The translations under genes and the position numbers were made by a program. A DNA stretch of 64,000 nt from IMG/VR virus record IMGVR_UViG_3300032296_003307, positions 204,740-268,739 of that record; one strand, 5' to 3'. How positions within the stretch are numbered: position 1 is the first letter of the stretch; each line of letters starts with the position of its first letter. Below the pieces are notes generated by a model, which searched no databases, was not told the DNA's origin, and saw nothing but the letters and a program-made list of their open reading frames with translations. This document shows positions 3,850-19,358 of the stretch, in pieces.

Positions 3850-3853
3850 AAAT

Positions 3854-4382: not shown

Positions 4383-4386
4383 ACAT

Positions 4387-4464: not shown

Positions 4465-4467
4465 AAT

Positions 4468-4538: not shown

Positions 4539-4544
4539 CTAAAT

Positions 4545-4584: not shown

Positions 4585-4585
4585 T

Positions 4586-4657
4586 GCGGGTGTCGTATAA
4601 AGGCTATTACTTCAGCCTTCCAAGCTGAAGATGGGAGTTCGATTCTCCCCACCCGCT
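4586..4657 (+). tRNA. tRNA-Gly(UCC)
   Basis: GCGGGTG/CACCCGC-T, TCAGC-CTTCCAA-GCTGA. Confidence 0.95.
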
Positions 4658-4662
4658 CAAAA

Positions 4663-4735
4663 GCGAGAGTGGCTCAGTTGGTAGAGCATGACCTTGCCAA
4701 GGTCAGGGTCGCCAGTTCGAACCTGGTCTCTCGCT
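4663..4735 (+). tRNA. tRNA-Gly(GCC)
   Basis: GCGAGAG/CTCTCGC-T, TGACC-TTGCCAA-GGTCA. Confidence 0.95.
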
Positions 4736-4805
4736 CGAATGTGAATCTTAAAAAGGGCACTTCCGTCTCGTTGAGCGGCACGCTGAGCCCGGATTCACAT
4801 ATCAC

Positions 4806-4877
4806 GGTCTCATAGTTAATCGGCTATAATATCGCCCTGTCACGGCGAAGTGCCGGGTTCGATTCCCGGTGGGACCG
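4806..4877 (+). tRNA. tRNA-Asp(GUC)
   Basis: GGTCTCA/TGGGACC-G, TCGCC-CTGTCAC-GGCGA. Confidence 0.95.
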
Positions 4878-5075
4878 CAAAATTCAGTCAGGGTCGAGCC
4901 ACGTTGTGCCACGACTGAATGATAGGTAAGGAAGGACAAGAGGTGGCCGTGACTACTCCTTACCGTTAATTTATGTATTTATTGGTATGTTTAAACGACT
5001 ACTAAAATACTTGGAATCAATAGAACAACACAGAATGAACGCCATTATTTTTGGTGGAAAAGGGTTGTTGTAGTT

Positions 5076-5149
5076 GGGCTGTTAGCTCAGATGGCTAGAG
5101 CACCTGCCTTGCACGCAGGGGGTCGAGAGTTCGAGTCTCTCACGGTCCA
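5076..5149 (+). tRNA. tRNA-Ala(UGC)
   Basis: G3.U70 pair, CCTGC-CTTGCAC-GCAGG. Confidence 0.95.
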
Positions 5150-5233
5150 CAAGATGAGTTTCCCTACACCTTTGGGTTAGTAACTAGTTAAAGGGGGACA
5201 AAAGTGGTATACAAGTCCACGACTCATCCACTT

Positions 5234-5310
5234 CGGGATGTTGGGGAGCCCGGTCACCCCGCCTGCTTTGGGAGCAGGAGAACTCGCAGGTTCGAATCCT
5301 GCCATCCCGA
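5234..5310 (+). tRNA. tRNA-Pro(UGG)
   Basis: CGGGATG/CATCCCG-A, CCTGC-TTTGGGA-GCAGG. Confidence 0.95.
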
Positions 5311-5354
5311 CAAAATTTTTTCAATATGTCAAAAACTTTTCTTATCTTTGTAAT

Positions 5355-5663
5355 ATGAAACAAAAAATTAATAAACTCGGTGCTTTGGTATCTGTAATGA
5401 TATGGTTTGTTCTTATAACCATCTTAGGTATCTTTTTGACTTCTTGTGGTAAGCCAAAGAACAGGATTGAAAAAGGTGATATTGTTCAGAAGTGTCAGAT
5501 TGATTCTATTAATGTTTTACCACAGCATTCAACAATCGAACCTGACAGGAAGTGTGAATATTTTACAAGTTGTGGAAGTAGAATTGTGTCACATGAAGGC
5601 GCTTTCAGGGTTGGTGATACTGTGACTTACGTATATAAGAAATCTAATAGTCAGAAAAACTGA
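5355..5663 (+). CDS. Putative lipoprotein
   Basis: The likely start is ATG 5355, after TAtcTTTG at 5343-5350. Hydrophobic stretch followed by lipobox LTSC. Confidence 0.7.
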   Translation: MKQKINKLGALVSVMIWFVLITILGIFLTSCGKPKNRIEKGDIVQKCQIDSINVLPQHSTIEPDRKCEYFTSCGSRIVSHEGAFRVGDTVTYVYKKSNSQKN

Positions 5664-6300
5664 TTAACTTTTTTATACGGTTCATAGATTCTGTCATACC
5701 GTCTTGGTAATCATATTTTCCAACATAAACGTCAGGATATTGTACGGTAATTGGATATTTTTTGCCGATTCTTTCCATAATATCATCCTGAATCGCTTCA
5801 GGACTATTCTCACTTAAATCGTCAAGTTCTGATTGAAACATACTTACTTTTTCTTCAAATTCAAAATCACCAAATTCTAAATTTGGGTAATATTTTTCAA
5901 CCACTTCATCCATTTTATTTGTATTTAAATCTCCAATAGTAACTACCGTTCCGTCGGCCATTTTTACAGTGCTGTTTGGATAAATTAAAACAGAATCTAA
6001 TTCTAAATCGTACGAAATTAAAATAGATGAAGTACGTATTGGTTCAATAGCATAATTCGTAACTTTATAAATTAATTTGGCGTAAGGGGTTTCTACAATT
6101 CCGGGGTTTTCAATTACCTCAGAAATAAGTTTAAAATAGTTTTTTTCACCACCGTAATATTCAACAATATAAGGTAAAAAATCTTCCAAGCCCCAACTTT
6201 CTTTCCCTATAAATCTTGAAACTTGATTTAAATTATATACATCAACACCTCTGGCATCCCAAAGTTTAAATAGTACTTTTTTTTCTTGGTCTGTTAACAT
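5644..6300 (-). CDS. Hypothetical protein, paralog of 6302-7084
   Basis: Shares KKxLxxxWxxxG, YYGG and PxST motifs and the C-terminal ESxxRIKxLISFSDY with its neighbour. Confidence 0.75.
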   Translation of the reverse strand: MLTDQEKKVLFKLWDARGVDVYNLNQVSRFIGKESWGLEDFLPYIVEYYGGEKNYFKLISEVIENPGIVETPYAKLIYKVTNYAIEPIRTSSILISYDLELDSVLIYPNSTVKMADGTVVTIGDLNTNKMDEVVEKYYPNLEFGDFEFEEKVSMFQSELDDLSENSPEAIQDDIMERIGKKYPITVQYPDVYVGKYDYQDGMTESMNRIKKLISFSDY

Positions 6301-6301
6301 A

Positions 6302-7084
6302 TTAATAATCTGAAAAAGATATTAAATTTTTTATTCTAATTACTGACTCGTTCAGATTTCCCAAATCAAAATCAACAATTTCAACTTTTGGTATATTTGG
6401 TTTTGGTGTAGGTGATGTTTGAACAAAAAATTTTTCTCGGGCAATTTTATTTAAGTAATCACTGGCGTTTTCTTTAATAGTTTCAATTAGTTCCTTAAAA
6501 TCTCCGTATATTTCTTTTTGATATTGTATATATTCTTCGCTACCAACTTCAATTTGAGGTAAATATTTTTCCATAAGTTGTTTGATTCCTAAATTTTTGA
6601 TTTCCAAAACAGGAATATATGTTGTTTCCCTGTTAAGGGTTGTGAACTTAAGAGTTGAACTTGGATGTAAATAAATTTTTTTCAAATACATTTTTGTGTT
6701 TTTAGGAACGCCATTATCATAGTAGGTTTGTACTAATTGTATGTCACCTAATTTTAAAAAAATGGTACCCATTGGGTTAATTAACGAACGGTCTTTTTTT
6801 GTTTCCTTTTTATAGACACCAAACTCCTGTAATATTTTTTCTTTGTATTTTTCTAATCCGCCGTAGTAATCAAAAAATAAATCGGTATAATATTCAGGTT
6901 GTAATTTATCTTTTGTGTAATAACCCACAAAACGTAAATCGCTTTCTAACCTATTTGGGTCAAAACCTTTTTTATTCCAAATAATGGATAGGATTTTTTT
7001 CTGATTTGGTGTTAATCTAGGTTCTCTTAAACCAAAAATTTTTTTTAGGTCAAATTCGTTAATTAGAGAAATTTTATTACCCAT
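6302..7084 (-). CDS. Hypothetical protein, paralog of 5644-6300
   Basis: Same shared motifs as 5644-6300. TATTTAT on the sense strand at 7091-7097. Confidence 0.75.
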   Translation of the reverse strand: MGNKISLINEFDLKKIFGLREPRLTPNQKKILSIIWNKKGFDPNRLESDLRFVGYYTKDKLQPEYYTDLFFDYYGGLEKYKEKILQEFGVYKKETKKDRSLINPMGTIFLKLGDIQLVQTYYDNGVPKNTKMYLKKIYLHPSSTLKFTTLNRETTYIPVLEIKNLGIKQLMEKYLPQIEVGSEEYIQYQKEIYGDFKELIETIKENASDYLNKIAREKFFVQTSPTPKPNIPKVEIVDFDLGNLNESVIRIKNLISFSDY

Positions 7085-7149
7085 GATTTTATAAATATTT
7101 GTTTTTTTAATTAAACTGATATATATTTGTAAGGTAATGTAATAAAGAT

Positions 7150-7278
7150 ATGGGAAAGTTCAGTTATGATGACTTTAACGAGGAAGAACAACCACGTAAA
7201 GGGTCAAGAAACGACAAAAAAGAGAGCAAGAAACCTAAACTTACAGACAAAACAAAAAAACCTAAAAAACCGAAATAA
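7150..7278 (+). CDS. Small Lys-rich basic protein (42 aa)
   Basis: MGKFSYDDFNEEEQPRKG...KKPKKPK, downstream of the promoter TTTG(7098-7101)-N20-TATATTTG(7122-7129). Confidence 0.6.
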   Translation: MGKFSYDDFNEEEQPRKGSRNDKKESKKPKLTDKTKKPKKPK

Positions 7279-7280
7279 CA

Positions 7281-7481
7281 ATGTCAAACAAAGAAAAAAA
7301 ACCAATTAATGCGGAAAATCTACAGAAGATTTCAAACGGAAATGAAATCCACATTAATATTGGAAAAAAATTCTTTGATATGGGTGATGTTGAGGTCATA
7401 GAAATACAAAGACCCAAAGAACCCGTCTACGGTGAAGATGAGTGGGATAATATACACGGAGATATAGTACACTTCACCTAA
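7281..7481 (+). CDS. Small hypothetical protein
   Basis: 66-aa ORF starting 2 nt after the upstream stop. Confidence 0.6.
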   Translation: MSNKEKKPINAENLQKISNGNEIHINIGKKFFDMGDVEVIEIQRPKEPVYGEDEWDNIHGDIVHFT

Positions 7482-7488
7482 TCAATAT

Positions 7489-7562
7489 AGACGGGTGGCG
7501 CAATAGGTTAGCGCAGGATTCTTATACAATCAAGGTTACGGGTTCAAGTCCCGTCTCGTCTA
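7489..7562 (+). tRNA. tRNA-Ile(UAU)
   Basis: AGACGGG/CTCGTCT-A, anticodon loop CTTATAC, T-loop TTCAAGT. Confidence 0.88.
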
Positions 7563-7566
7563 CTTC

Positions 7567-7640
7567 GGGCCTTTAGCTCAGTCGGTCAGAGCAGGACACT
7601 CATAATGTCAAGGTCGTAGGTTCGAACCCTACAAGGCCCA
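7567..7640 (+). tRNA. tRNA-CAU (probably Ile2/lysidine type; elongator Met not excluded)
   Basis: GGGCCTT/AAGGCCC-A, anticodon loop CTCATAA, paired 1:72. Confidence 0.85.
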
Positions 7641-7691
7641 CAAATTATAATTTTATTCCTTTTTTTATTGAGTTATCCATATTTATTTATT

Positions 7692-8330: not shown

Positions 8331-8960
8331 ATGTCTGACATTATTGCAGGAAATTTTCAGTGGAAGTCTAACGGAGGTCCTCGTAATCACCCATCAGGTT
8401 CTTGGAAATTATCTAATGCGTGGGATTTAGAGTCCAGAGAGGGTAATGATGTGTTTTCCGCTGTTAATGGAATGGTAACCGAAAAACAAAGTCCGTCAAC
8501 ACCAGGTCATCTGTATGGTACATCGATAACTATAAGAGGTGAAGGTTCCTACCCAACTATTTTTTATAGTAATTTAAGTTCTGTAAATGTTAACGTAGGG
8601 TCACAAGTTAGAGTCGGTGATAAACTAGGTGAAATTGCAAACGCGCCGGCAGGTACATCCCCTTATATACACATAGCTCTACCAATTGGAAAAGATATAA
8701 CATCGATTATAAGTAACAACGGTTCTTTTGTATCTCCATCTGGTTCATCTTCAGGTGTTGAGGATGCCGCGGTCGCCGCAGGAGCCGCAGGAGCGACTGC
8801 GTTGGCTAGTGGTGATGGTAAAAAAGATAATGGAGATGGTGGAAGTTTTATGGACAAATTTTATGGTACTTTAACCAAAGGTTTATTACCCTTTGGATTA
8901 GTTACGGGTGTTGCCGGTATGAAAGAAGAGGTCGAAAGAATTAAAGAACTTATGAAATAA
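8331..8960 (+). CDS. M23 peptidase-like protein
   Basis: DL...VFSAVNGMV...YGTSITI...YSNL...VNVGSQVRVGDKLG...PYIHI matches the M23 fold pattern; the metal-binding motifs are partly degenerate. Confidence 0.7.
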   Translation: MSDIIAGNFQWKSNGGPRNHPSGSWKLSNAWDLESREGNDVFSAVNGMVTEKQSPSTPGHLYGTSITIRGEGSYPTIFYSNLSSVNVNVGSQVRVGDKLGEIANAPAGTSPYIHIALPIGKDITSIISNNGSFVSPSGSSSGVEDAAVAAGAAGATALASGDGKKDNGDGGSFMDKFYGTLTKGLLPFGLVTGVAGMKEEVERIKELMK

Positions 8961-9282: not shown

Positions 9283-9639
9283 ATGGAACATTTAAAAAAA
9301 ATTATACACGAAAGTTTGGGACGTGTTCTCAAAGAACAAATGGCTGCCCCAATGGAGGGACAAAAACAAGCGACGCAACAACCTCAAAAATCTATTAAAC
9401 CTAAAAAAGACGAAATTAAAGTTCCTGAAAATTGTTTTGGCGGACCTAAAAAACAAGCCGGTGGTTTAGTCGCTTTAATTCAAGTATTAATGAAGGATAG
9501 TGATAGAAACGGTGAAAGAGCGGTTGAGGAAATTAAAAGATTCTCAGAAGGTAAATCTAAACCTGACCCTAAAGAAGTGGTACAAATTTTAAACAAATAC
9601 AACAAACAAAAATATTTGGGATACGCAGGTTGTTTCTAA
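9283..9639 (+). CDS. Hypothetical protein
   Basis: 118 aa; TATTTAT at 9271-9277. Confidence 0.7.
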   Translation: MEHLKKIIHESLGRVLKEQMAAPMEGQKQATQQPQKSIKPKKDEIKVPENCFGGPKKQAGGLVALIQVLMKDSDRNGERAVEEIKRFSEGKSKPDPKEVVQILNKYNKQKYLGYAGCF

Positions 9640-9658: not shown

Positions 9659-9686
9659 AAAAGGTGGTCAATGACCACCTTTTTTT
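9659..9686. terminator. Bidirectional terminator (ends the tmRNA and the convergent CDS)
   Basis: AAAAGGTGGTCA-A-TGACCACCTTTT inverted repeat with a T-run. Confidence 0.8.
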
Positions 9687-9691
9687 GTTTG

Positions 9692-10072
9692 TGGAGGTGG
9701 AGGGTATCGAACCCTCGTCCAGTCTACCTTGACTGTAAGGTACTACACGTTTAGGTTAACATTTGCTAATGTTCCAAACTTCACAATTCCCTTATTTTAT
9801 AGTGGTTCGGTTTACTGAGAACTAATCCTCCACTTGTTTCTTTTAAGATAGAAACCACACCTCTAAAGGACTTATGTTCCTAGGTTAATGTCCTCCCGAC
9901 CTGAGTGTTATAGCGATTAGGCTACAACTGAAGCCTCTTCACGGAACAAACCGCAAGCTGCCATGTTATTTAAAACGTTGCCGTCTAATTGGTTAAATCA
10001 GTTTTTAATGAGTTAATTCAGCTCATACGTGCACCTTACCTTCAAAAATACCTGTCAAATCCAGTCACCCCC
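9692..10072 (-). ncRNA. ssrA: tmRNA
   Basis: 5' GGGGGTGACTGGATTTGAC, 3' GAGGG-TTCGATA-CCCTC-CACCTCC-A with G3.U70. Tag ORF 9982-9917 encodes (A)GNVLNNMAACGLFREEASVVA. Confidence 0.92.
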
Positions 10073-10075
10073 ATA

Positions 10076-10098
10076 TTTCAAAGAACACTACAAATATA
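10076..10098 (-). promoter_or_regulatory. Host-type -7 promoter plus boxA-like element for tmRNA
   Basis: On the minus strand, TATATTTG (10098-10091) followed by GTTCTTTGAAA (10086-10076). Confidence 0.65.
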
Positions 10099-10138
10099 CT
10101 AACACTATAAATATATTCCAAGTATTTATAAGAAACAT

Positions 10139-11971
10139 ATGAAACTTTTTTCAATACTGACCGAGTCAAAAAAATCTGACGTAAAAAAAGAATTACTGTC
10201 TAAATTTCCTGAAGCCGAAATGTATATTGACCGTGCGATTAATTCTGACCCAACAGGATTCAAATATATGGATTACATTAAACGTTCATTTATTGATTTA
10301 TATCCTATTTCTAAAAGTTGGGGTAATGAAGAAAGTCTTGTTGAATATTTTGACGATATATCTTGGTTTGAAAACAATTATAAAAGATTATCTATTGATG
10401 ATATTGATTCAATATATGAAGACGCTAAGGCGGACAACGCATCGCAAAAAATGTTGAGAAGCATTGTATCAATAAATCCAAACAAAATAAGGGATATTAA
10501 TTCTTGGGACATTAGGACGTTAAAATATGTTAGGGATTATGTTAATTCTAAAAAAACAAGAAAACAAATGGAAAAAGAAGCCAAGGAAGGTGCTGACTTG
10601 GTTTATGAATCCCCAAACAAAAAAGTTTTAGTTTTCAAAGTTAAAACACATGCCGCCGCTTGTTACTATGGTAGAAATACCAAATGGTGTGTAACAACCG
10701 CAGGACAACCTGGTCATTTTCAAAGGGAAACCCAAGATTACGATATGTATTTTGTTGTTGATAGAACAGGTGAAAGGGAAAAATTGGCGGTACAGAAACC
10801 AAAAGACAGACGCAAATCAAACTTCTTGAAAGTATGGAATGAAAAAGACGTTGAAAAGGGTCCTAATCATTTATACGATTTGTATCCTGAAGTACATGAT
10901 GTATTTGTTGGTGATTCAATGAACGAAACAATTAAGTTCTTAAAATCATTAACAACAGATAATTTGGGTAAGTACCGTTGGGATTATCCTGATGATTTAA
11001 TTACTGATATGTATTTGGCGGGTTCTACTGAAGAGGGTAATTTAAGGATAATAATTGAGATTACCTTTTCAGATAAAAGTTTTTGGGAAATGTATGATAT
11101 AAATGAATATGATAGTACATTAATTCAAACTGTCTATTCTCCTTACAACAGTTGGGATTTTTGGGACACATACACAATAAAAGAAGATTTTGAAGAAGGT
11201 TATTTGTGGAACTACGCAACCAACGAGCAACAAGAAGAAATATCAAGGTTATGTCAAATTTTATTTCCATCATATCTTGTACAATTAAAACAAAATACAT
11301 TGGACGAAATGCCTAAGGAATTTAATCAGTTAGTAGAAAAAACTTTCCCAAGAAAAATTGATAGTATGGTCTATGAGTACACAGCATCAAAGAATAATGA
11401 AGCCGAACACAACGTTAGAGATGGATTAGAAAGTGAATATTGCGACATATTCAAAGAATATAATGGTAAGGTGATGTCTTGTTTTTATAGATACGCCTTT
11501 AATGTTAATGACCTTATCAGGTTATTAGAAGATTACAAAGGTGGTGATGTTTTTGATTCTTTAAGAGCATATGTAAATAGAGTGTCTGACGCACCATATG
11601 AAATTAGTGATTGGGCTTACCAAGGTGGGGGGTCATCTGACGAATACAATGGTATGGAAAACGAATTTGACTCTTTAATTAACGCGATGCAAGAATCGGT
11701 TGATAGTAGTGAAGATGTTGAAGACATTACCCGAAAAACAGAGGAGTACAACAACTTCAACAAATTTTTAGAAAAAAATAAAATAACTGTTGGAGATTGG
11801 AATACATTACCATCGGACAATAATTTTTCCTTTAGAATTAATACAATTGACTTTAAAGAGGGTAAGGTGGACCTTCAAATCAAATCAAACGATACGGGCA
11901 ACATGAAAGAATATTTCCCCACCTACGAAGAATTTACAAGTTTATTATACAATTATCAACTTTTTAGATAA
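10139..11971 (+). CDS. Large hypothetical phage protein (AACYYGRNTKWC motif)
   Basis: 610-aa ORF; TATTTAT at 10123-10129. Confidence 0.75.
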   Translation: MKLFSILTESKKSDVKKELLSKFPEAEMYIDRAINSDPTGFKYMDYIKRSFIDLYPISKSWGNEESLVEYFDDISWFENNYKRLSIDDIDSIYEDAKADNASQKMLRSIVSINPNKIRDINSWDIRTLKYVRDYVNSKKTRKQMEKEAKEGADLVYESPNKKVLVFKVKTHAAACYYGRNTKWCVTTAGQPGHFQRETQDYDMYFVVDRTGEREKLAVQKPKDRRKSNFLKVWNEKDVEKGPNHLYDLYPEVHDVFVGDSMNETIKFLKSLTTDNLGKYRWDYPDDLITDMYLAGSTEEGNLRIIIEITFSDKSFWEMYDINEYDSTLIQTVYSPYNSWDFWDTYTIKEDFEEGYLWNYATNEQQEEISRLCQILFPSYLVQLKQNTLDEMPKEFNQLVEKTFPRKIDSMVYEYTASKNNEAEHNVRDGLESEYCDIFKEYNGKVMSCFYRYAFNVNDLIRLLEDYKGGDVFDSLRAYVNRVSDAPYEISDWAYQGGGSSDEYNGMENEFDSLINAMQESVDSSEDVEDITRKTEEYNNFNKFLEKNKITVGDWNTLPSDNNFSFRINTIDFKEGKVDLQIKSNDTGNMKEYFPTYEEFTSLLYNYQLFR

Positions 11972-11993
11972 TTTTTCGTATCTTTGTATTCAA

Positions 11994-12863
11994 ATGGAAA
12001 GATTACAATTATTAAAAGACGTTCTGTCTGTACGCACTTGCACATATCAAGAAGATTATTTGGTTGAGTTTTTGAGAAATTACTTAACAGAAAAAAATTA
12101 TGATTTTTTCATTGATGAGTTCAAAAACGTATATGTCACAAAAACTTCACCTGAGTTTGAAGGTCAACATTTTCCTTGTGTGGTTGCTCATACCGACACC
12201 GTACATTGGGGAATGAAATCAATTAATATCAAAGAAGAGATTAAATTGGATTACCAAAAAAGGGAAAAATTGTCATTAAAAGCATACGATGACGAAGGCA
12301 ATCCATCAGGTATTGGTGGCGATGATAAAGCCGGTGTATTTGGATGTTTGAGTTGTTTGGAGGATTTACCACATATCAAAGTTGCGTTGTTTGTTTCAGA
12401 AGAAACAGGTTGTCACGGTTCAAAAATGGCTAATTCTGAATTTTTTTCTGATGTTGCCTACGCCATCCAATTTGACGGACCTGAAAATTATATGATTACC
12501 GAAGTTTGTTCAGGTATCAGATTGTTTGACCGTAATAGTTACTTCTTTGATGTTATTGATGGTGTTTTTACCGAAAAAATGGAATATCACCAATACATGA
12601 TTCACCCATACACAGATGTGTCAATGCTCAAAATGAAATTTGACTTCGCATGTGTGAATATATCAATTGGGTATTACAACTACCACACCGCTCATGAATA
12701 CGTTGTTTTGGACGACGTAGAACGTGGTATTGATGTTTGTAAAACAATCATTGAAAGGTTGGGTTACGAAAAACAACTTTACGAATACAAAAAACCAACT
12801 TACAATCGCCATTTCTACGTAAAAGACGAAGATGAAGATTTTGTTCAAAGGTATTTGTTCTAA
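11994..12863 (+). CDS. Zinc peptidase, M20/M28/M42 clan
   Basis: AHTDTV, GGDDKAG, EETG, QFD and YHT metal-binding motifs. TAtcTTTG promoter at 11979-11986. Confidence 0.85.
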   Translation: MERLQLLKDVLSVRTCTYQEDYLVEFLRNYLTEKNYDFFIDEFKNVYVTKTSPEFEGQHFPCVVAHTDTVHWGMKSINIKEEIKLDYQKREKLSLKAYDDEGNPSGIGGDDKAGVFGCLSCLEDLPHIKVALFVSEETGCHGSKMANSEFFSDVAYAIQFDGPENYMITEVCSGIRLFDRNSYFFDVIDGVFTEKMEYHQYMIHPYTDVSMLKMKFDFACVNISIGYYNYHTAHEYVVLDDVERGIDVCKTIIERLGYEKQLYEYKKPTYNRHFYVKDEDEDFVQRYLF

Positions 12864-12891
12864 TTAATTATTTCGGCATATTTATTTAATT

Positions 12892-14298
12892 ATGCCAAGA
12901 TTTATTCTAACAGAACAAGAAAGAAAAAGGATTCTTGAATTATATCTAAATGAACAAGTGGCTCAAATACCATACCCAACTGGTGTTACTAAAGCCGCGG
13001 TAGACAAAATACTATCTATTTCGGCACAAAATAAAAAAGGTTTAAGAGGTTCTTATTTGGCTCCTTTACAACAACAAGAAATAGACAAAGAATTTGGTAA
13101 AGATACTTTTAAGAAATTTTTTGATGGTGGCGGTAGAGACGTTTTAGACGGAAAAAAAACATTCAAAGATAGTTCTATACCGGAAATTTTAAATTGTGTA
13201 AGATTTGATGAAAAAGATGGAGACACAATGGGAACCTATACTAACGGTAAAAAATATGTTAGAGTTTTTAATCCAAACAGTATTCAAGTTTTTTGGGAGA
13301 CAGGGGCTTTTCAACAATTTGTACGTAAATCGGATAACTCTGCAGGTTCATTAACTAAAAGTGGTACATACGCATGTAACGCACAAAAGAACGATGTGGT
13401 AATTAGCGCCACCGATACAGGTGCAAATACCGGTTCAGTAAATCTTGATTGTGTAAGATTTGATGAAAAAGATGGAGACACAATGGGAACCTATACTAAC
13501 GGTAAAAAATATGTTAGAGTTTTTAATCCAAACAGTATTCAAGTTTTTTGGGAGACAGGAGAATTTCAACAATTTGTGCGTAAAGCAGACAACTCCGCAG
13601 GTCCATTAACTAAAAGCGGAAAATGGTCTTGTAACGCAACAAAAGATAACGTTGTAATAGACACCAACCAAACCGGTTCTACATCAAACAAGACTGAGTG
13701 GATGACATATTTAACTGACTCAGTTTTTAATGGTAAATCAAAACAATATCTAAAATATAAAGACCAAGACTCTGTTTATTTCCCTGATTCTAAAACATAT
13801 TATACTGAGAAAGAATGGTTTACCGTTGATGATTCAGGAAATGTGACAAAATCAGGATATTGGTTCCAAGACAAAAATAAACCTCAAAACAGCCAGTTTA
13901 CGCAAGGTGAAGGTAAAAATCCAAATGAAAAAACTGTTACAGTTGCACCTCCTTTAGAAAATGTTGCAAAAGGAACCGCAAGTATGAAACAGGGTAACCA
14001 AGGTGATTCTGTAAAAACATTACAACAAATGTTAATAGATAAAGGATATTTAAAAATCAATAATCCAACTAATTACTTTGGTAATATGACCTACAATGCG
14101 GTTCTACAGTTCCAAAAAGACAGTCTTTTGAAAAAACAAGATGGTATCGTTGGTTATGAAACATATACTGCCTTGTATAGAGCCCCTGAAGTTCAAAAAA
14201 CACCTGATGTGAACATACAACCAAAAGGAATACAAGCTCAACCACTTTCGTCCGAAACCCCAAAGACACCTACCCAAATAACAATACCCAATAGATAA
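12892..14298 (+). CDS. Protein with a tandem-duplicated domain and C-terminal peptidoglycan-binding domain
   Basis: GNQGDSVKTLQQML...FGNMTYNAVLQFQ...DGIVGYETY matches PG_binding_1; internal 85-aa-period duplication. Confidence 0.8.
   Translation: MPRFILTEQERKRILELYLNEQVAQIPYPTGVTKAAVDKILSISAQNKKGLRGSYLAPLQQQEIDKEFGKDTFKKFFDGGGRDVLDGKKTFKDSSIPEILNCVRFDEKDGDTMGTYTNGKKYVRVFNPNSIQVFWETGAFQQFVRKSDNSAGSLTKSGTYACNAQKNDVVISATDTGANTGSVNLDCVRFDEKDGDTMGTYTNGKKYVRVFNPNSIQVFWETGEFQQFVRKADNSAGPLTKSGKWSCNATKDNVVIDTNQTGSTSNKTEWMTYLTDSVFNGKSKQYLKYKDQDSVYFPDSKTYYTEKEWFTVDDSGNVTKSGYWFQDKNKPQNSQFTQGEGKNPNEKTVTVAPPLENVAKGTASMKQGNQGDSVKTLQQMLIDKGYLKINNPTNYFGNMTYNAVLQFQKDSLLKKQDGIVGYETYTALYRAPEVQKTPDVNIQPKGIQAQPLSSETPKTPTQITIPNR
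13193..13640 (+). repeat. Direct intragenic duplication, period 255 nt
   Basis: 13193-13304 is identical to 13448-13559 (112 nt); similarity continues with mostly third-position changes. Confidence 0.95.
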
Positions 14299-14299
14299 G

Positions 14300-16306
14300 T
14301 TAAACTTTTTCTATCTTAATTATTTCGTCAAATTTCAAGACGTAATTTTCACCTTCAATTACATTACCAACCAAGTATTCTTCTGAAATATAATCTTCAA
14401 CTTCATCTTGAATCGCTCTTTTAATCGGTCTGGCACCGAATGTTTCGTCAAACCCGACTTTGGCAATATGTTCAATTATGGTATCGTCAAATTCAAAGTT
14501 AAGTTTTAATTCTGTTAACCTGTCTTTAAGTTTTACTATTTCCAATTTAACAATTTTTTCAATTTCGGGTTGTTTCAAAGAGTTAAAAACAATAACTTCA
14601 TCAATACGATTTAAAAATTCAGGAGAGAAATAATTTTTCATTTCTTTTTGAAGAATTTGACGCTTGTACTCTTCTTGTGTTGAAGAGCTTGATGCGGTTG
14701 AAAAACCAATCTGAGTTCCAAAATCTTGTAATTTTTTAACCCCTAAGTTTGAAGTCATAATAATCAAACAATTTTTAAAGTTGATTTTTCTACCTAAAGA
14801 ATCAGTTAAATGACCTTCATCTAACATCTGTAACAATGTGTTAAAGATTTCTTTGTTTGCCTTTTCAACTTCATCAAACAGAATTACCGAATAAGGTTTG
14901 TTCTTAACTTGTTCGGTTAACTGTCCACCTTCATCGTAACCAACATAACCAGGAGGAGCACCAATCAATTTGGAAATGGTGTGTTTTTCTTGAAACTCAG
15001 ACATATCTACACGGATAAGATTGTCTTCACTACCAAAGATTTGTTTTGCCAATTGTTTTGCCAAGTGAGTCTTACCAACACCTGTTGAACCCAAGAAAAT
15101 GAATGAACCGATAGGTTTATTTGGGTCTTTAATTCCCAACCTATTTCTGCGAATTGATTTTGCAATTTTGGTAACCGCCTCATCTTGTCCAATAACTTTG
15201 TCCATCAGAGATTTGTCTAAGGCAATTAAGTTTGTTTTATCATCAACAGATATTTTAGAAACAGGAATTTTAGTCATAGAAGAAACGACATCCAAAACAA
15301 GTTCAGGTAAAATCTCGCGTTTCTTTTCTGACATTTCTATCTCATACCTTTCCTTTTCATTTTCTAACTTACTGGCAATTTTTTTCTCTTTGTTCCGTAA
15401 TTCTGCCGCCTCTTCATATTTTTGTCTTTTCACAACATCTTTTTTCTTTTCACTTATTTCTCTGAGTTGTGCGGTAAGTTTTTCTATGATTTCAGGTACT
15501 TTGGCCTCTACTTGTGCACGAGCACCAACCTCATCCATAATGTCAAACGCTTTGTCAGGAAACTCTCTGTCGGTAATGTATCTATCAGCCAAATTAACAC
15601 AAAGCTCAAGTACTTCATCAGAATAACTTACTTTGTGATATTCTTGATACTTTGTTCTTAGATTTTTAAGAATTAATAATGTTTCTTTTTTTGATGGTGA
15701 ATCAACAACTACTTTTTGAAATCTGCGTTCTAACGCACCGTCTTTTTCAAAGTTTGTTCTGTATTCATCTAGTGTTGTTGCTCCGATACATTGAATTTCA
15801 CCACGAGCAAGGGCGGGTTTAAATATATTAGAGGCGTCCATAGAGCCCGATGCGTTACCCGCACCAACTATAGTATGAATTTCATCGATAAAAACAATAA
15901 TTTCGGGGTTTTTTGACAATTCTTCAATAATTACTTTTAATCTTTCTTCAAACTGACCACGATATTTTGTTCCAGCAACAATTGATGTCATATCCAATAG
16001 AACAATCCTCTTACTCAATAAGTTACGTGGACAATCACCATTAAAAATTTTCATGGCGAGACCTTCAACAATTGCGGTTTTACCACAACCTGGCTCTCCT
16101 ATGATTATTGGATTGTTTTTCTTTCTTCTTGAAAGAATTTGAGCAATTCGTTGTATTTCACGTTCTCTACCAATTACAGGGTCTAATCTACCTTCTGACG
16201 CCAATTTTATTAGGTCTTTTGAGAAGTTATCCAATACGGGTGTAGATGAACTGTTACGTCTACTTTGCGGTTTTACATTTTCGTTGTCGTCCATTGATTC
16301 AATCAT
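14300..16306 (-). CDS. clpC: ClpC/ClpA-type AAA+ chaperone lacking the Clp N-terminal domain
   Basis: Two Walker A motifs (GEPGCGKT, GSTGVGKT), pore loops KYRG and GYVG, UVR-like middle domain and IGF ClpP-docking loop. Start MIES follows TATATTTG at 16318-16311. Confidence 0.92.
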   Translation of the reverse strand: MIESMDDNENVKPQSRRNSSSTPVLDNFSKDLIKLASEGRLDPVIGREREIQRIAQILSRRKKNNPIIIGEPGCGKTAIVEGLAMKIFNGDCPRNLLSKRIVLLDMTSIVAGTKYRGQFEERLKVIIEELSKNPEIIVFIDEIHTIVGAGNASGSMDASNIFKPALARGEIQCIGATTLDEYRTNFEKDGALERRFQKVVVDSPSKKETLLILKNLRTKYQEYHKVSYSDEVLELCVNLADRYITDREFPDKAFDIMDEVGARAQVEAKVPEIIEKLTAQLREISEKKKDVVKRQKYEEAAELRNKEKKIASKLENEKERYEIEMSEKKREILPELVLDVVSSMTKIPVSKISVDDKTNLIALDKSLMDKVIGQDEAVTKIAKSIRRNRLGIKDPNKPIGSFIFLGSTGVGKTHLAKQLAKQIFGSEDNLIRVDMSEFQEKHTISKLIGAPPGYVGYDEGGQLTEQVKNKPYSVILFDEVEKANKEIFNTLLQMLDEGHLTDSLGRKINFKNCLIIMTSNLGVKKLQDFGTQIGFSTASSSSTQEEYKRQILQKEMKNYFSPEFLNRIDEVIVFNSLKQPEIEKIVKLEIVKLKDRLTELKLNFEFDDTIIEHIAKVGFDETFGARPIKRAIQDEVEDYISEEYLVGNVIEGENYVLKFDEIIKIEKV

Positions 16307-16343
16307 ACCACAAATATACAACTATGTTTCATATTATCAACTA

Positions 16344-16380
16344 TGACAATTTGTCTTTATTATATGACAAAATGTCATAT
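16344..16380. promoter_or_regulatory. Tandem TGACA-N3-TGTC(A) operator-like palindromes between divergent clpC and the UVR gene
   Basis: TGACAatt TGTCT (16344-16356) and the perfect ATATGACA-aaa-TGTCATAT (16362-16380). Confidence 0.6.
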
Positions 16381-16443
16381 TTTCTTTTTTGGTATAATTT
16401 TATATAATTGTAAGGAAAATAAAAGAAATAAAAAAATAAAAAT

Positions 16444-16902
16444 ATGTTTAACAGAAATTTTAAATTAAAAGATTGGTTAAAAGAATTTGACGACATTTAT
16501 GAGTCATTAAGTAAATCCGCTTGGGAAATTAAAAACGAAATGGGTTTAGAAGAAAACACTGAATCGGGTGAAAATGAAAACGGTAAGTGGAAAAGAACTA
16601 CCTATACCACACCTGGTAAAAATGGTATAACATACACAGTGACAACTTATCATGTTGGTTCTGATAAAACCGAAACAACTGAAAAAGAAACCGAGATTTA
16701 TATGTTGAAAAAAGAACTTGCTCAGGTAGTGGAAAAACAAGATTTTGAAAAGGCGGTAGAGTTGAGAGATAAAATTAAAAAACTTGAAACATCAAACAAA
16801 GAAATCACTAAATTAGAATCTGATTTGAAATCTGCAATTGACAAAGAAGATTTTGAAACGGCAATCAAACTACGGGACAAAATCAAAAAAATGAAATCCT
16901 AA
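16444..16902 (+). CDS. Double UvrB/UvrC (UVR) motif protein, McsA-like C-terminus
   Basis: LxxxVEKQDFEKAVELRDKIK and LKSAIDKEDFETAIKLRDKIK. Confidence 0.85.
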   Translation: MFNRNFKLKDWLKEFDDIYESLSKSAWEIKNEMGLEENTESGENENGKWKRTTYTTPGKNGITYTVTTYHVGSDKTETTEKETEIYMLKKELAQVVEKQDFEKAVELRDKIKKLETSNKEITKLESDLKSAIDKEDFETAIKLRDKIKKMKS

Positions 16903-16905: not shown

Positions 16906-16935
16906 TAACCCCCGACTTAGTTTCGGGGGTTTTTT
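16906..16935 (+). terminator. Intrinsic terminator
   Basis: AACCCCCGA...TCGGGGGTT followed by a T-run. Confidence 0.8.
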
Positions 16936-16948: not shown

Positions 16949-17323
16949 ATGAAACTTTGGGAAAAATATTTAGATACGACCAAAAAGGATTTGGCCATTC
17001 TGAATGAATACAGAAAAATGAGAAAAATTTTACAGGATTATGATACCGAAGAATGGCAATTATCTAAAGGAATTAATATCCCAACAGAAGCATATTTTAT
17101 TAGGTCTCAAATAGTTGAACGACTTACAAGCTTAAGAAGTATGTTAGAAAAATTGGGTTTAACTAACACCGAAGAAGAACAGTCGGATTTTACTACCTAC
17201 ATTATGACTAAATTTTCAGAAATAGATAAAGAAATACCTTTACAAAAAGGAAATGAACCCGATAATATAAGCGGAGAAAAAATATGGCAATCAAGAGTCA
17301 AACAATCGAAGGTACAAAGATAA
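16949..17323 (+). CDS. Hypothetical protein
   Basis: 124 aa; TATTTAT at 16937-16943. Confidence 0.65.
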   Translation: MKLWEKYLDTTKKDLAILNEYRKMRKILQDYDTEEWQLSKGINIPTEAYFIRSQIVERLTSLRSMLEKLGLTNTEEEQSDFTTYIMTKFSEIDKEIPLQKGNEPDNISGEKIWQSRVKQSKVQR

Positions 17324-17526
17324 TTAATGAAATAGTTTCAACAAACTTGGTTAAAACTACGTATGACGTAGAAGAAAACAGTTTAATTGCGGAATTTAAA
17401 AATGGTGTACAGTACATATACGAAAAAGTTCCCCATGAACTATACGTAAGGTTTAGAAACGCAGAATCGCAGGGAAATTTTTTTAATACACAAATATCTA
17501 AAAAATATAAATACAAAAAACTTTAA
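17284..17526 (+). CDS. KTSC domain protein
   Basis: STNL..TTYD.EENSLIAEFKNG.QYIYEKVP..LY..F.NAESQGNFFN..I matches the KTSC pattern. Confidence 0.85.
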   Translation: MAIKSQTIEGTKIINEIVSTNLVKTTYDVEENSLIAEFKNGVQYIYEKVPHELYVRFRNAESQGNFFNTQISKKYKYKKL

Positions 17527-17548
17527 CATTTCCTTGTATTTATTATGG

Positions 17549-18301
17549 ATGGCAATTGATAAAGAAATAATTAACTCTTTTGAACCCAAGGATAAATTAA
17601 ATCCAAAAATTTGGTATACACCAAAAGGGGAAGATACACCAAAATTACAACCTGAAGTTAGAACCGCATTACTTAAATCGGCTCAACTTTTTATTGAGTA
17701 CGTAAAAGTAGATTTTTTCTTTTCGGATATTATTATGCCTGGTTCTTTAGCAAATTACAATTGGTCAAAGTATTCAGATGCGGATGTTCACATCATTGTT
17801 AATTTAGACCAATTTGATAGAGATGAAATTCCTTTATACCAAGAGTTATTTAAAATTAAAAAAACACTTTTTAATAATACTCATAACATTAAAGTTAGGG
17901 GATATGATGTTGAAATGTATATCGAAGATAGTTCTGTCCCAAGATTTTCAGAAGGAACATACTCAATAATGTTTGATGAATGGATTTCGGTTCCAAAAAA
18001 AGAAGAATTTAAAATAGATAAAGAACTTTTAAAAAAGAAAACTAAGAATTGGATGGACCAAATTGATTTGGTAATTAGCCAAACAAAAAAAGAAGATGTT
18101 GATGATATACGTGATTTGTTTAAAAAGATTGATGATAAGTTAAAAAAATATAGAACGGAAGGTCTTAGACAAGGTGGTGAGCAATCTTATGAAAATTTAG
18201 TATTTAAAATTTTAAGAAGAAATGGGTATATTGGAAAGATGAAAGACTACGAAACTGAATTCGTTGATAAAAAGTTATCGGTTGAACAAACTGAAGAATA
18301 A
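17549..18301 (+). CDS. Pol-beta-superfamily nucleotidyltransferase
   Basis: GSLANYNWSKYSDADVH (GS...DxD) and a third acidic residue in YDVEMY. Start MAIDK follows TATTTAT at 17537-17543. Confidence 0.75.
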   Translation: MAIDKEIINSFEPKDKLNPKIWYTPKGEDTPKLQPEVRTALLKSAQLFIEYVKVDFFFSDIIMPGSLANYNWSKYSDADVHIIVNLDQFDRDEIPLYQELFKIKKTLFNNTHNIKVRGYDVEMYIEDSSVPRFSEGTYSIMFDEWISVPKKEEFKIDKELLKKKTKNWMDQIDLVISQTKKEDVDDIRDLFKKIDDKLKKYRTEGLRQGGEQSYENLVFKILRRNGYIGKMKDYETEFVDKKLSVEQTEE

Positions 18302-18341: not shown

Positions 18342-19358
18342 ATGGCTTTAGTAACATATACCATAGCACCATGTGCAGGAGGGAGCACATTAGATGTTGA
18401 ATTTAGTGGCTCATCTTTACCCGTGGTCGGCGGGAATTATTATTTAACCTTTACAGGTGCGACAACTCAAGGTTGTTATGAAATTGTTGATACTTCAGAA
18501 CCAGGAACTGGTTCGGATAAAGTTGATACTATGTCAACAAATTATGGTGATTGTGCGACTTGTTTGACGGCAAATCCAACCCCAACCCCAACACCAACAG
18601 TATCCTTGACTCCATCGGTAACCAAGACACCAACCAATACCCCGACTCAAACCAAAACACAGACACAAACACCAACTAAAACACCAACCCAAACTAAAAC
18701 ACCTACAAACACTCCAACACCTACCACAACACCTTCTACTTGCTTTTCAGCAATAACCGACACTACAAATTGGTATTATACAGATTGTTGCGGTAACTTT
18801 CAAGGAGGAAATGAAATAGGTATTACTGTTTGTGTTGATAGTACTAAACCTAATTCGGGTTTGGCAATTTTGGTAGATTTTCCGTGTAGTCAATCATGCC
18901 CTACACCAACACCAACAGCTTCAGTAACTAAAACACCAACAAACACACCAACTAATACACCAACTAAAACATCAACACCAACTAATACACCAACTAAAAC
19001 TCAAACACCTACAAAAACAACAACAAACACACCAACACCTTCACAAACACAAACTAAGACACCAACTAATACACCAACACCAACCAATACACCAACTAAA
19101 ACATCAACCCCAACAATAACACCAACTAAAACCCCTACACAAACGTCAACACCTACACCCTCATTTACTCCCTTTTATTCGATTGAAACAGGTTCTGAGT
19201 ATTTTATGTGTGTAATTTGTCCCGACGAAGGATTAACAGGTTATACCTATACACCAACAACAGTTCCACATCCAGCAGCAGCAAACGCACAGGAAAACGT
19301 AACTATATACCAAAGAGGTGCAGTCGTAATTGGCGGACCTGATGGATTAAACTCATAA
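18342..19358 (+). CDS. Thr/Pro-repeat (mucin-like) protein with small Cys-rich modules; putative virion surface protein
   Basis: Two long (TPT/TKT/TNT)n tracts separated by Cys-rich motifs. Confidence 0.7.
   Translation: MALVTYTIAPCAGGSTLDVEFSGSSLPVVGGNYYLTFTGATTQGCYEIVDTSEPGTGSDKVDTMSTNYGDCATCLTANPTPTPTPTVSLTPSVTKTPTNTPTQTKTQTQTPTKTPTQTKTPTNTPTPTTTPSTCFSAITDTTNWYYTDCCGNFQGGNEIGITVCVDSTKPNSGLAILVDFPCSQSCPTPTPTASVTKTPTNTPTNTPTKTSTPTNTPTKTQTPTKTTTNTPTPSQTQTKTPTNTPTPTNTPTKTSTPTITPTKTPTQTSTPTPSFTPFYSIETGSEYFMCVICPDEGLTGYTYTPTTVPHPAAANAQENVTIYQRGAVVIGGPDGLNS

What the first reader, a model, noticed from the sequence alone, without database searches (positions are those of the whole stretch)
9692..16902. 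Phage ribosome-rescue and proteolysis set: tmRNA with a long atypical tag, N-domain-less ClpC and a divergent double-UVR protein
Seen: the tmRNA tag (A)GNVLNNMAACGLFREEASVVA has 21 encoded residues and ends in VVA rather than the usual LAA. ClpC starts directly at the first AAA module, with no Clp_N adaptor domain, but keeps the UVR middle domain and IGF loop. The gene opposite encodes two UVR motifs, and a zinc peptidase lies between tmRNA and clpC. Established: UVR coiled coils pair with one another, and ClpC activity is gated by its middle domain and adaptors. Inference: the phage redirects host ClpP with its own unfoldase, activator and degradation tag.
Basis: partly seen in the sequence, partly recalled or inferred. 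Interest (0 to 1): 0.6.

Follow-up and report, generated by a model that had tools for sequence, protein, structure and literature searches.

The report
Jumbo-phage tmRNA, headless ClpC, peptidase block
A 269-kb freshwater phage, probably of Bacteroidota, carries a real ribosome-rescue RNA that writes an unusually long 22-residue tag, beside a ClpC unfoldase lacking its regulatory N-domain and a small peptidase; this block is kept across a large phage clade, but that the parts work together is still only inferred.

Summary
All four observations are real. The tmRNA lies at 9689-10072 on the minus strand (Rfam 99.5 bits). ARAGORN does not call it. Its tag frame gives 21 codons ending V-V-A, and 48 distinct relatives keep the same frame with a coding-type substitution pattern. 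ClpC (14300-16321, minus) has both AAA+ modules, the UVR M-domain and an I-G-F ClpP loop, but no Clp_N domain. P0005 (16444-16902) carries two UVR motifs. P0002 (11994-12863) is a lid-less PepT-like M20 peptidase with all metal ligands conserved.

The genome is a complete 268.7-kb jumbo phage with no ClpP, SmpB or Clp_N, so it must rely on the host for these. The closest cellular ClpCs are all Bacteroidota, whose tags are 9 codons ending [LM]AA.

The order clpC, peptidase, unknown P0001, tmRNA holds in every one of 80 related viral loci that reaches far enough (58 of 80). However, the whole neighbourhood is collinear, so this is weak evidence of function. The UVR gene occurs in only 30 of the 80 loci.

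Published work on S. aureus ClpC makes a tag-reading N-less ClpC plausible. A complex prediction for ClpC with the UVR protein gave no answer.

Verdict: a new variant of known kinds. The functional coupling is plausible but unproven.

The parts
9689..10072 (-). tmRNA gene (ssrA), 384 nt. The tRNA-like domain has a G3-U70 pair and discriminator A. The 3' end reads CAA, not CCA, so CCA must be added after transcription.
   Evidence: Rfam RF00023 99.5 bits, E 1e-37, model 1-374; sequence read; homologues found in 58 related viral loci.
9917..9982 (-). Tag reading frame inside the tmRNA: resume codon GGC, 21 sense codons ending V-V-A, then a TAA stop. With the charged Ala this makes a 22-residue tag.
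   Evidence: Frame read. The same frame is open in 48 distinct relatives, giving 25 distinct peptides of 21-22 residues, all ending V-A or A-A. G1, G11, L12 and the last A are invariant. Codon-position entropy is 13.2/7.1/19.8, and the other two frames are closed in 48 and 43 of 48. ARAGORN calls the same frame in 3 relatives.
9659..9683 (-). Terminator-like hairpin (11 pairs) directly 3' of the tmRNA. It also lies behind the plus-strand gene 9283-9639.
   Evidence: sequence.
10139..11971 (+). P0001, a 610-aa protein of unknown function and a conserved member of the block.
   Evidence: No Pfam or PHROG family. Homologues of 353-615 aa lie between the peptidase and the tmRNA in 69 of 80 loci. 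AlphaFold2 pLDDT is 86, but there is no fold match.
11994..12863 (+). P0002, a 289-aa M20-type (PepT-like) metallopeptidase: catalytic domain only, with no lid or dimerisation domain.
   Evidence: H66, D68, D110, E136, E137, D161 and H231 are at least 97% conserved in 58 distinct homologues. Present next to clpC in 77 of 80 loci.
12892..14298 (+). P0003, a 468-aa protein with a C-terminal PG_binding_1 domain and an internal duplication. It is an insertion specific to this genome and not part of the conserved block.
   Evidence: A tblastn match was found only in L006, a contig identical to the window here.
14300..16321 (-). N-domain-less ClpC (673-aa ORF; likely start ATG at 16306, giving 668 aa).
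   Evidence: No Clp_N anywhere in the genome. It is the only AAA_2 protein in the genome.
15377..15469 (-). UVR motif of the ClpC M-domain (residues 285-315). The tip aromatic Tyr302 corresponds to S. aureus Phe436.
   Evidence: PF02151, 20.4 bits; alignment to 6em8. The tip aromatic is Y or F in 78 of the 80 clade ClpCs; the search pattern did not match the other two.
14702..14710 (-). ClpP-docking loop I-G-F (residues 538-540).
   Evidence: G539 and F540 are invariant in A2. [IV]-G-F is present in all 80. Flavobacterium ClpC has V-G-F at the same place.
16444..16902 (+). P0005, a 152-aa double-UVR protein without cysteines, transcribed divergently from clpC.
   Evidence: PF02151 x2, E 1.4e-16. 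The family occupies the same position in 30 of 80 loci. 138 relatives in the large protein collection, none with a meaningful source name and several on contigs of 100-228 kb. UVR1 is 50% identical over 22 residues to the phage ClpC M-domain tip.
16907..16931 (+). Terminator-like hairpin after P0005.

Best explanation
This is a conserved proteostasis and ribosome-rescue block in a clade of freshwater jumbo phages whose hosts are probably Bacteroidota.

Shown here:
- A structurally complete tmRNA whose tag frame is under peptide-level selection.
- A catalytically intact two-ring ClpC core of Bacteroidota ancestry that has lost only its N-domain.
- A lid-less PepT-like M20 peptidase with intact metal ligands.
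- No phage ClpP, SmpB or Clp_N.

Inferred mechanism:
1. The phage tmRNA is charged by host AlaRS and delivered by host SmpB to stalled ribosomes. It frees them and appends a clade-specific 22-residue tag in place of the host's 10-residue one.
2. The N-less ClpC docks on host ClpP through its [IV]-G-F loop. Without an N-domain it escapes N-domain-dependent repression and adaptor control, and takes substrates directly at its pore, including the phage tag.
3. The peptidase trims the released peptides towards free amino acids for phage protein synthesis.
4. In the subclade that includes this phage, the double-UVR protein is proposed to cap the aromatic M-domain tips of ClpC, so that the rings do not lock head-to-head into inactive assemblies. 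Its two hairpins resemble the ClpC M-domain tip and carry the equivalent Phe.
For: - tmRNA. Tag selection.
- The host lineage's tags are short and end [LM]AA.
- ClpC motifs are intact in all 80 clade members, apart from single search-pattern misses in three of the four Walker motifs. 56% identity to Flavobacterium ClpC, with the same M-domain tip and ClpP loop.
- All 80 best cellular ClpC matches but one (a MAG labelled Thalassomonas) are Bacteroidota.
- No ClpP, SmpB or Clp_N in a genome rated 100% complete.
- Peptidase metal ligands are conserved.
- The order clpC, peptidase, P0001, tmRNA, with the tmRNA on the clpC strand 1.2-7.1 kb away, holds in 58 of 80 loci. The other 22 contigs end too early, so there is no counter-example. 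This persists although P0001 falls to about 20% identity and insertions occur inside the block.
- The variable slot next to clpC holds either the double-UVR gene or an Hsp20 gene, both proteostasis-type.
- Literature on S. aureus ClpC (PMC12583610). The N-domain stabilises the resting state. N-less ClpC binds ClpP but forms inactive rods through M-domain tip contacts. N-less ClpC-F436A degrades GFP-SsrA as well as MecA-activated wild type. The SsrA tag is recognised at the pore, not by the N-domain.
- UVR-domain proteins are enriched among chloroplast CLPC1 interactors (PMC8889267).
- A near-identical 258-nt piece of the tmRNA is present in a metatranscriptome. This is weak evidence because only contigs were available.
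Against: - No experiment or computation here links the tag to ClpC.
- The genes are not one operon.
- Genes with no evident link to proteolysis on the far side of clpC (KTSC protein, 255-aa protein) are equally collinear in 76 loci. Synteny may therefore be inherited order only.
- The tmRNA sits at the edge of the 30-tRNA region, which by itself explains its position.
- The UVR gene is absent from within about 10 kb of clpC in 50 of 80 loci, so it cannot be a general requirement.
- Huge phages with N-less ClpC at 49-56% identity have no linked tmRNA, peptidase or UVR gene.
- The analogy comes from a Firmicute ClpC. Nothing is known about the regulation of Bacteroidota ClpC.
Confidence: 0.4

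Rival explanations
1. The functions are independent and the genes are neighbours by descent. The tmRNA belongs with the adjacent tRNA block and simply adds ribosome-rescue capacity during infection, with its tag handled by the host's normal SsrA proteases. ClpC is a general unfoldase or chaperone for host takeover or virion maturation. The peptidase has its own separate role.
For: - The whole neighbourhood is collinear, including genes with no evident link to proteolysis.
- The tmRNA lies directly after the tRNA cluster.
- The strands differ and each gene has its own terminator.
- N-less ClpC occurs without a linked tmRNA in other huge phages.
- Tags ending in small aliphatic residues are the general rule for host protease recognition (general knowledge, not tested here).
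Against: - It does not explain why the tag is more than twice the host length and has conserved internal positions (G11, L12 and the hydrophobic pattern), which point to a dedicated reader.
- It does not explain why the block survives insertions and deep divergence of P0001.
Confidence: 0.35
2. The double-UVR protein acts on the HOST ClpC rather than on the phage ClpC. As a mimic of the M-domain tip, it would break or lock the host ClpC resting state, deregulating or blocking host proteolysis.
For: - Both hairpins carry the F/Y-E-x-A-x-x-[LI]-R-D motif of the ClpC M-domain tip.
- The host-type ClpC tip is nearly identical to the phage ClpC tip, so either could be the target.
- Weak local structural matches to the S. 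aureus ClpC resting-state M-domain (39% identity over 51 columns) and to McsA (Foldseek E about 0.8, so leads only).
Against: - No binding evidence of any kind.
- The gene is limited to one subclade.
- It sits divergent from the phage clpC, which favours a role with the phage protein.
Confidence: 0.1
3. The tag is not a degron. The phage tmRNA would rescue ribosomes while marking products with a tag that host proteases handle poorly, or it would compete with host tmRNA for SmpB, altering host quality control.
For: - The C-terminus differs from the host [LM]AA.
- A mycobacteriophage tmRNA reduced to the tRNA-like domain has been suggested to titrate SmpB (PMC4131195).
Against: - A full-length tag frame that is selected at the peptide level, with an invariant final Ala, argues for recognition rather than a neutral or blocking tail.
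- An unfoldase and a peptidase lie beside it.
Confidence: 0.1

Closest known systems
Bacterial trans-translation with SsrA-tag proteolysis (tmRNA-SmpB, then ClpXP, ClpAP, Lon or FtsH)
   Same: The tmRNA fits the Rfam model over its full length. It has a G3-U70 tRNA-like domain and a resume codon behind a U-A-(G/A)-A-(C/U) context, and its tag ends in small aliphatic residues.
   Different: It is encoded by a phage that has no SmpB. The tag has 21-22 codons against 9 in Bacteroidota, ends V-x-V-A rather than [LM]-A-A, and has conserved internal G-L. ARAGORN misses 45 of 48 members.
Known phage tmRNAs: mycobacteriophage Bxz1 group, Wildcat, DS6A, Bacillus phage G (PMC4131195); huge phages (PMC7162821)
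   Same: A large phage carrying ssrA next to many tRNAs; a role in ribosome rescue has been proposed for these.
   Different: Those reports do not describe a conserved link to a Clp unfoldase or a peptidase, nor this tag family. The word 'Clp' does not occur in the main text of the huge-phage paper, and no paper in the library mentions a phage-encoded ClpC.
Engineered S. aureus N-less ClpC and N-less ClpC-F436A (PMC12583610)
   Same: The same architecture as the phage protein: AAA1, an M-domain with an aromatic tip, AAA2 and a ClpP loop, with no N-domain. The engineered form binds ClpP without an adaptor and, once tip contacts are removed, degrades SsrA-tagged GFP.
   Different: The phage protein is a natural, conserved gene of Bacteroidota ancestry that keeps the tip aromatic (Tyr302). 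By analogy it would still need something to prevent head-to-head locking. This has not been tested.
UVR-domain partners of ClpC: McsA (Firmicutes); CLPF, EXE1/2 and UVR2-4 (chloroplast; PMC8889267)
   Same: A small protein with UVR hairpins encoded beside clpC. JGI labels some relatives 'McsA'. There is a weak local structural match to McsA in the McsA/McsB complex.
   Different: P0005 has no cysteines and so lacks McsA's zinc fingers. The window holds no McsB. It has two UVR hairpins plus a short N-terminal helix and sheet region modelled with low confidence. It is not a member of the McsA family.
Peptidase T (PepT, M20B tripeptidase; PDB 1fno, 1vix)
   Same: The blocks around the metal ligands align, and all ligand positions are conserved.
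   Different: It has 289 residues against about 410. The lid/dimerisation domain is missing, and the Pfam scores lie just under the cut-offs.

Membership tests
tmRNA (Rfam RF00023) | Full-length match to the covariance model above the gathering score | tested here: met
   99.5 bits against a gathering score of 47; model positions 1-374; E 1e-37.
tmRNA (Rfam RF00023) | tRNA-like domain with acceptor stem, T-arm and the G3-U70 alanine identity pair | tested here: met
   The 5' strand GGGGGUG pairs with the 3' strand CACCUCC, giving G3-U70. The T-arm is GAGGG/CCCUC and the discriminator is A (sequence).
tmRNA (Rfam RF00023) | Internal open tag frame with resume codon and in-frame stop, conserved among relatives | tested here: met
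   21-22 codons open in 48 of 48 relatives; third-position variation is highest; the alternative frames are closed.
tmRNA (Rfam RF00023) | Tag of the usual bacterial kind (about 8-12 codons ending [LMV]-A-A) | tested here: not met
   21 codons ending V-V-A. The Bacteroidota genomes examined give 9 codons ending [LM]AA.
tmRNA (Rfam RF00023) | Works with an SmpB partner | not testable with these tools
   No SmpB in the phage genome; host SmpB would be needed.
ClpC (class I Hsp100 that docks on ClpP) | Two AAA+ modules with Walker A/B motifs and pore loops | tested here: met
   Pfam AAA and AAA_2. GEPGCGKT, FIDEI, GSTGVGKT, LFDEV, KYRG and GYVGY are all present.
ClpC (class I Hsp100 that docks on ClpP) | Short M-domain with a single UVR-type coiled coil | tested here: met
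   PF02151 at residues 285-315 (20.4 bits, cut-off 21.5). It aligns without gaps to the S. aureus ClpC M-domain.
ClpC (class I Hsp100 that docks on ClpP) | [LIV]-G-[FL] ClpP-docking loop in AAA2 | tested here: met
   I538-G539-F540; conserved in all 80 clade members.
ClpC (class I Hsp100 that docks on ClpP) | N-terminal Clp_N repeat domain (site for adaptors and phospho-arginine) | tested here: not met
   No PF02861 in the protein or anywhere in the genome. The alignment starts at residue 152 of S. aureus ClpC and residue 166 of Flavobacterium ClpC. Only 122 nt of intergenic DNA lie upstream.
M20 metallopeptidase (PepT-like) | Pfam family score above the curated cut-off | tested here: inconclusive
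   M20 scores 22.9 against 24.6 bits and M42 scores 23.1 against 23.2 bits. PHROG 4191 'peptidase' scores 7e-34.
M20 metallopeptidase (PepT-like) | His/Asp/Glu/Asp/His metal ligands and the catalytic Glu | tested here: met
   H66, D110, E137, D161 and H231, plus D68 and E136, are at least 97% conserved in 58 homologues. The blocks align to PepT.
M20 metallopeptidase (PepT-like) | Lid/dimerisation domain inserted in the catalytic domain | tested here: not met
   289 aa. PepT residues about 200-360 have no counterpart.
McsA (protein-arginine kinase activator) | N-terminal CXXC zinc fingers | tested here: not met
   P0005 contains no cysteine.
McsA (protein-arginine kinase activator) | UVR motif | tested here: met
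   Two PF02151 motifs.
McsA (protein-arginine kinase activator) | Partner kinase McsB encoded alongside | not tested
   No kinase-like gene was seen among the annotated neighbours. The genome was not searched with the McsB family.

The most novel reading that the evidence does not exclude
A phage-private branch of trans-translation. The phage tmRNA writes a clade-specific 22-residue degron that is read at the pore of the phage's own N-domain-less, adaptor-independent ClpC docked on host ClpP. An M-domain-tip-mimicking double-UVR protein (in one subclade) keeps the rings from locking, and a lid-less PepT-like peptidase completes breakdown to amino acids. Together they would form an orthogonal tag, unfoldase and peptidase pathway imposed on a Bacteroidota host.
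Probability: 0.3. Interest if true: 0.8.

Novelty: new variant of a known kind. Interest (0 to 1): 0.62.

Why it matters
Phage tmRNAs have been catalogued, but their tags and the fate of the tagged proteins are essentially unstudied.

- This clade offers a widespread tag family with conserved internal positions. It occurs in lake, freshwater and drinking-water metagenomes from at least 8 studies.
- The standard detector misses the family almost entirely, so surveys based on it under-count phage tmRNAs.
- The tmRNA sits next to a natural version of the N-less ClpC that was only recently shown, as an engineered protein, to escape resting-state control and to gain SsrA-tag degradation.
- If the parts are coupled, this would be the first case of a virus bringing its own degradation tag together with the unfoldase that reads it.
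- It would also give a natural system for studying ClpC control without an N-domain, and possibly a new M-domain-binding regulator.
- If the parts are not coupled, the result is still useful: a clean annotation of a conserved auxiliary block in uncultivated jumbo phages that probably infect Bacteroidota.

Tried and rejected
- ARAGORN at default settings gives no tmRNA call in the window or in the 800-nt region. Relaxed thresholds find the span but give an implausible tag, AITLRSGGH. This was rejected in favour of the frame shared by 48 relatives and by ARAGORN's own calls on 3 of them.
- Complex prediction of ClpC residues 40-400 with P0005: score 0.03 against a mark of 0.32, verdict 'no answer'. 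It counts neither for nor against binding.
- Fold searches. P0001 has no Foldseek PDB match at E <= 0.001, and its best VIA Z of 6.6 covers only a short helical stretch. P0005 has no significant match; the short local hits to the ClpC M-domain and to McsA have E about 0.8 and are leads only.
- The protein atlas search for P0001 returned only unnamed viral clusters.
- Searches of the phage genome for ClpP, SmpB, Clp_N and a second Clp ATPase found none.
- Test of the link in distant huge phages (LR756502, LR745206, LR756508): N-less ClpC is present, but no tmRNA, peptidase, P0001 or UVR gene lies within 12 kb. One of them has a tmRNA 360 kb away with an unrelated tag.
- A collection-wide scan for this tmRNA class by DNA pattern was considered. 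The 48 sequences share no run of 14 specified bases, so it was not run.
- The sigma-70 promoter scan found no more sites than shuffled sequence, and Bacteroidota promoters are of another type, so it is uninformative.
- RNA runs were available only as contigs, so neither transcription nor the RNA ends can be shown.


Full report
**1. What the window is**

The window is the last 64 kb of a single 268,739-bp IMG/VR virus record that CheckV rates 100% complete. Terminase (23508-25280), portal (25307-27124) and major head protein (31325-33208) lie just downstream of the finding. The genome carries 30 tRNAs, all between 182 and 212 kb, so the tmRNA sits at the edge of that block. No cultivated phage is close: the terminase is at most 29% identical to any GenBank phage, and the best named hits are Flavobacterium and cyanobacterial myophages. 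Near-identical DNA occurs in lake, freshwater and drinking-water metagenomes from at least 8 studies.

**2. The tmRNA and its tag**

Rfam places a full-length tmRNA at 9689-10072 on the minus strand (99.5 bits, E 1e-37). The tRNA-like domain has the G3-U70 pair and discriminator A. The 3' end reads CAA, so CCA is not fully encoded. A terminator-like hairpin follows directly.

ARAGORN does not call the gene.

I recovered 48 distinct homologous tmRNAs from related viral contigs. In all of them the same frame is open for 21-22 codons, giving 25 distinct peptides. Gly1, Gly11, Leu12 and the final Ala are invariant, and the hydrophobic pattern and the V/A-x-V-A end are conserved. Codon-position entropy is 13.2/7.1/19.8, the signature of a translated frame. 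The +1 frame is closed in 48 of 48 and the +2 frame in 43 of 48. ARAGORN calls only 3 of the 48, in the same frame.

The context before the resume codon, U-A-(G/A)-A-(C/U), resembles the E. coli U-A-G-U-C; that comparison rests on my own knowledge.

Five Bacteroidota genomes were examined. Four gave ARAGORN tags, all of 9 codons: GENNYAMAA, GESNYAMAA, GENNYALAA and GDNRFALAA. The phage tag is therefore truly atypical for the likely host lineage. It shares the initial Gly.

**3. ClpC**

The 673-aa ORF probably starts at Met6, which is invariant in the clade. It has AAA, AAA_lid_9, UVR, AAA_2 and D2-small domains but no Clp_N. It aligns end to end with S. aureus ClpC from that protein's residue 152 (E 5e-217). 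It is 56% identical to Flavobacterium olei ClpC from residue 166. That 848-aa protein does have Clp_N.

Across the 80 clade members the pattern searches matched as follows:

| Feature | Members matched |
|---|---|
| First Walker A | 80 of 80 |
| Each of the other three Walker motifs | 79 of 80 |
| M-domain tip aromatic (Tyr or Phe, at the S. aureus Phe436 position) | 78 of 80 |
| [IV]-G-F ClpP loop | 80 of 80 |

The 80 best cellular matches are Bacteroidota at 54-58% identity, except one MAG labelled Thalassomonas. This suggests a Bacteroidota donor and host.

The phage genome has no Clp_N, no ClpP, no SmpB and no second Clp ATPase. N-less ClpC is also found in three huge phages of 484-642 kb. 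No paper in the searchable library mentions a phage-encoded ClpC.

**4. The other genes**

- **P0002** is an M20-type peptidase whose conserved blocks align to Peptidase T but which lacks the lid domain. All metal-ligand positions are at least 97% conserved in 58 homologues.
- **P0001** (610 aa) has no family and no fold match, although its model is confident.
- **P0003** (PG_binding_1) occurs only in this genome.
- **P0005** has two UVR hairpins of the form [DN]-[FY]-E-x-A-[IV]-x-[LI]-R-[DE]. These resemble the ClpC M-domain tip: 50% identity over 22 residues. It also has a short N-terminal part modelled with low confidence. It has no cysteines, so it is not McsA. 138 relatives exist, all from sequence collections without meaningful names, some on contigs of 100-228 kb.

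**5. Synteny**

At least 594 viral stretches encode relatives of this ClpC. The best 80 (71-100% identity) all begin at query residue 1-20, nearly all at 1-6, and their ORFs are 664-689 aa, so they are equally N-less.

- In 58 of these loci a tmRNA lies 1.2-7.1 kb downstream on the clpC strand.
- The other 22 contigs end within 1.3 kb of the P0001 homologue or earlier, so there is no counter-example.
- The peptidase is present in 77 loci and P0001 homologues in 69.

Three points limit what this shows.

- Genes on the other side of clpC are just as conserved. The KTSC protein and the 255-aa protein are each found in 76 loci, so the region is simply collinear.
- The double-UVR gene occupies a variable slot next to clpC in only 30 loci. 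In 4 loci the slot holds an Hsp20 gene, and in the rest it is empty.
- The distant huge phages show none of these links.

**6. Mechanism**

What is shown: every part looks functional, and the phage must borrow ClpP, SmpB, AlaRS and CCA addition from the host.

What is inferred: the tag is the substrate signal for the phage ClpC.

The best outside support is PMC12583610.

- In S. aureus the N-domain stabilises the inactive resting state and acts as a selectivity filter.
- N-less ClpC forms hexamers and binds ClpP, but locks into inactive rods through M-domain tips.
- N-less ClpC-F436A degrades GFP-SsrA as well as MecA-activated wild type.
- The SsrA tag is read at the pore.

A natural N-less ClpC beside a tmRNA fits this well. 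Because the phage ClpC keeps its tip aromatic, the analogy predicts a need for a tip-capping factor. P0005 is a reasonable candidate for that role in its subclade. UVR-domain proteins are enriched among chloroplast CLPC1 interactors (PMC8889267).

The one complex prediction allowed gave no answer and is not used as evidence either way. A PepT-like peptidase downstream of a Clp protease would complete breakdown to amino acids. That step is inference only.

**7. Expression**

Three metatranscriptome runs hold pieces of the locus. In X18 a 258-nt piece of the tmRNA (9776-10033) has 2 differences and a depth of 14.6, against 2-3 for pieces of the neighbouring genes. These are contigs from RNA libraries and do not prove transcription.

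**8. Verdict**

- **Observation:** confirmed, with corrections to strand, detector and gene content.
- **Interpretation:** partly supported. Dependence on host ClpP and a phage-specific tag are well grounded. The ClpC-tag coupling and the activator role of the UVR protein remain hypotheses.
- **Novelty:** a new variant of known kinds (phage tmRNA; ClpC). The specific features are a tag family not described in the literature searched here and a natural N-less ClpC, co-inherited across a large clade of uncultivated freshwater jumbo phages.

Noticed in passing
window 9689-10072 and tmRNAs in L007-L085: ARAGORN at default settings misses this tmRNA and 45 of 48 distinct relatives. Phage surveys that rely on it, such as the huge-phage study, would under-count this class.
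   Followed up: yes
window 3416-7641; genome 182-212 kb: All 30 tRNAs of the genome lie in one 30-kb region that ends just before the tmRNA. The window includes a tRNA-Ile with anticodon UAU (7489-7563). It also includes a 92-nt tRNA-Leu(UAG) call (3758-3849) that Rfam does not list at its gathering score.
   Followed up: no
window 12892-14298: A 468-aa protein with a C-terminal peptidoglycan-binding domain and an internal duplication of about 70 residues. It is inserted between clpC and the peptidase in this genome only.
   Followed up: partly
L034 9432-9860 (also L082, L083, L085): In four related loci the slot next to clpC that holds the double-UVR gene here is occupied by an Hsp20/alpha-crystallin gene (PF00011, 7.5e-14). 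This is another proteostasis gene in the same position.
   Followed up: partly
window 16949-18301: A 124-aa protein, a KTSC-domain protein (17284-17526, overlapping the previous ORF by 40 nt) and a 255-aa protein are conserved in 39, 76 and 76 related loci. The 255-aa protein has no Pfam family. Together they show that the neighbourhood is collinear well beyond the proposed set.
   Followed up: partly
window 8331-8960: An M23-family peptidase domain protein lies just upstream of the tmRNA (PF01551, 3.3e-10).
   Followed up: no
window 18342-19358: A 338-aa protein with a long Thr/Pro/Lys/Gln-rich repeat region and no family match.
   Followed up: no
L171-L173 (LR756502, LR745206, LR756508): Three huge phages of 484-642 kb also encode N-domain-less ClpC (657-707 aa; 49-56% identity). 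N-domain loss therefore looks like a recurrent or ancient feature of phage ClpC, independent of the tmRNA link.
   Followed up: partly
L174 (LR756508 92434-92880): This huge phage has a tmRNA (72 bits) for which ARAGORN gives the tag GRRKPLSW. That tag is unlike both bacterial tags and the tag family described here, and it may be a mis-call.
   Followed up: no
PDB 8xon_S: A 696-residue solved chain labelled 'NDP-hexose 4-ketoreductase' aligns to the ClpC core from its residue 41 (E 2e-200). It may be another natural ClpC without an N-domain.
   Followed up: no
window 9776-10033, run X18: An aquatic metatranscriptome holds a 258-nt contig piece of the tmRNA with 2 differences, at higher depth than pieces of the neighbouring genes. 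This is compatible with expression but is not proof, because only contigs were available.
   Followed up: partly
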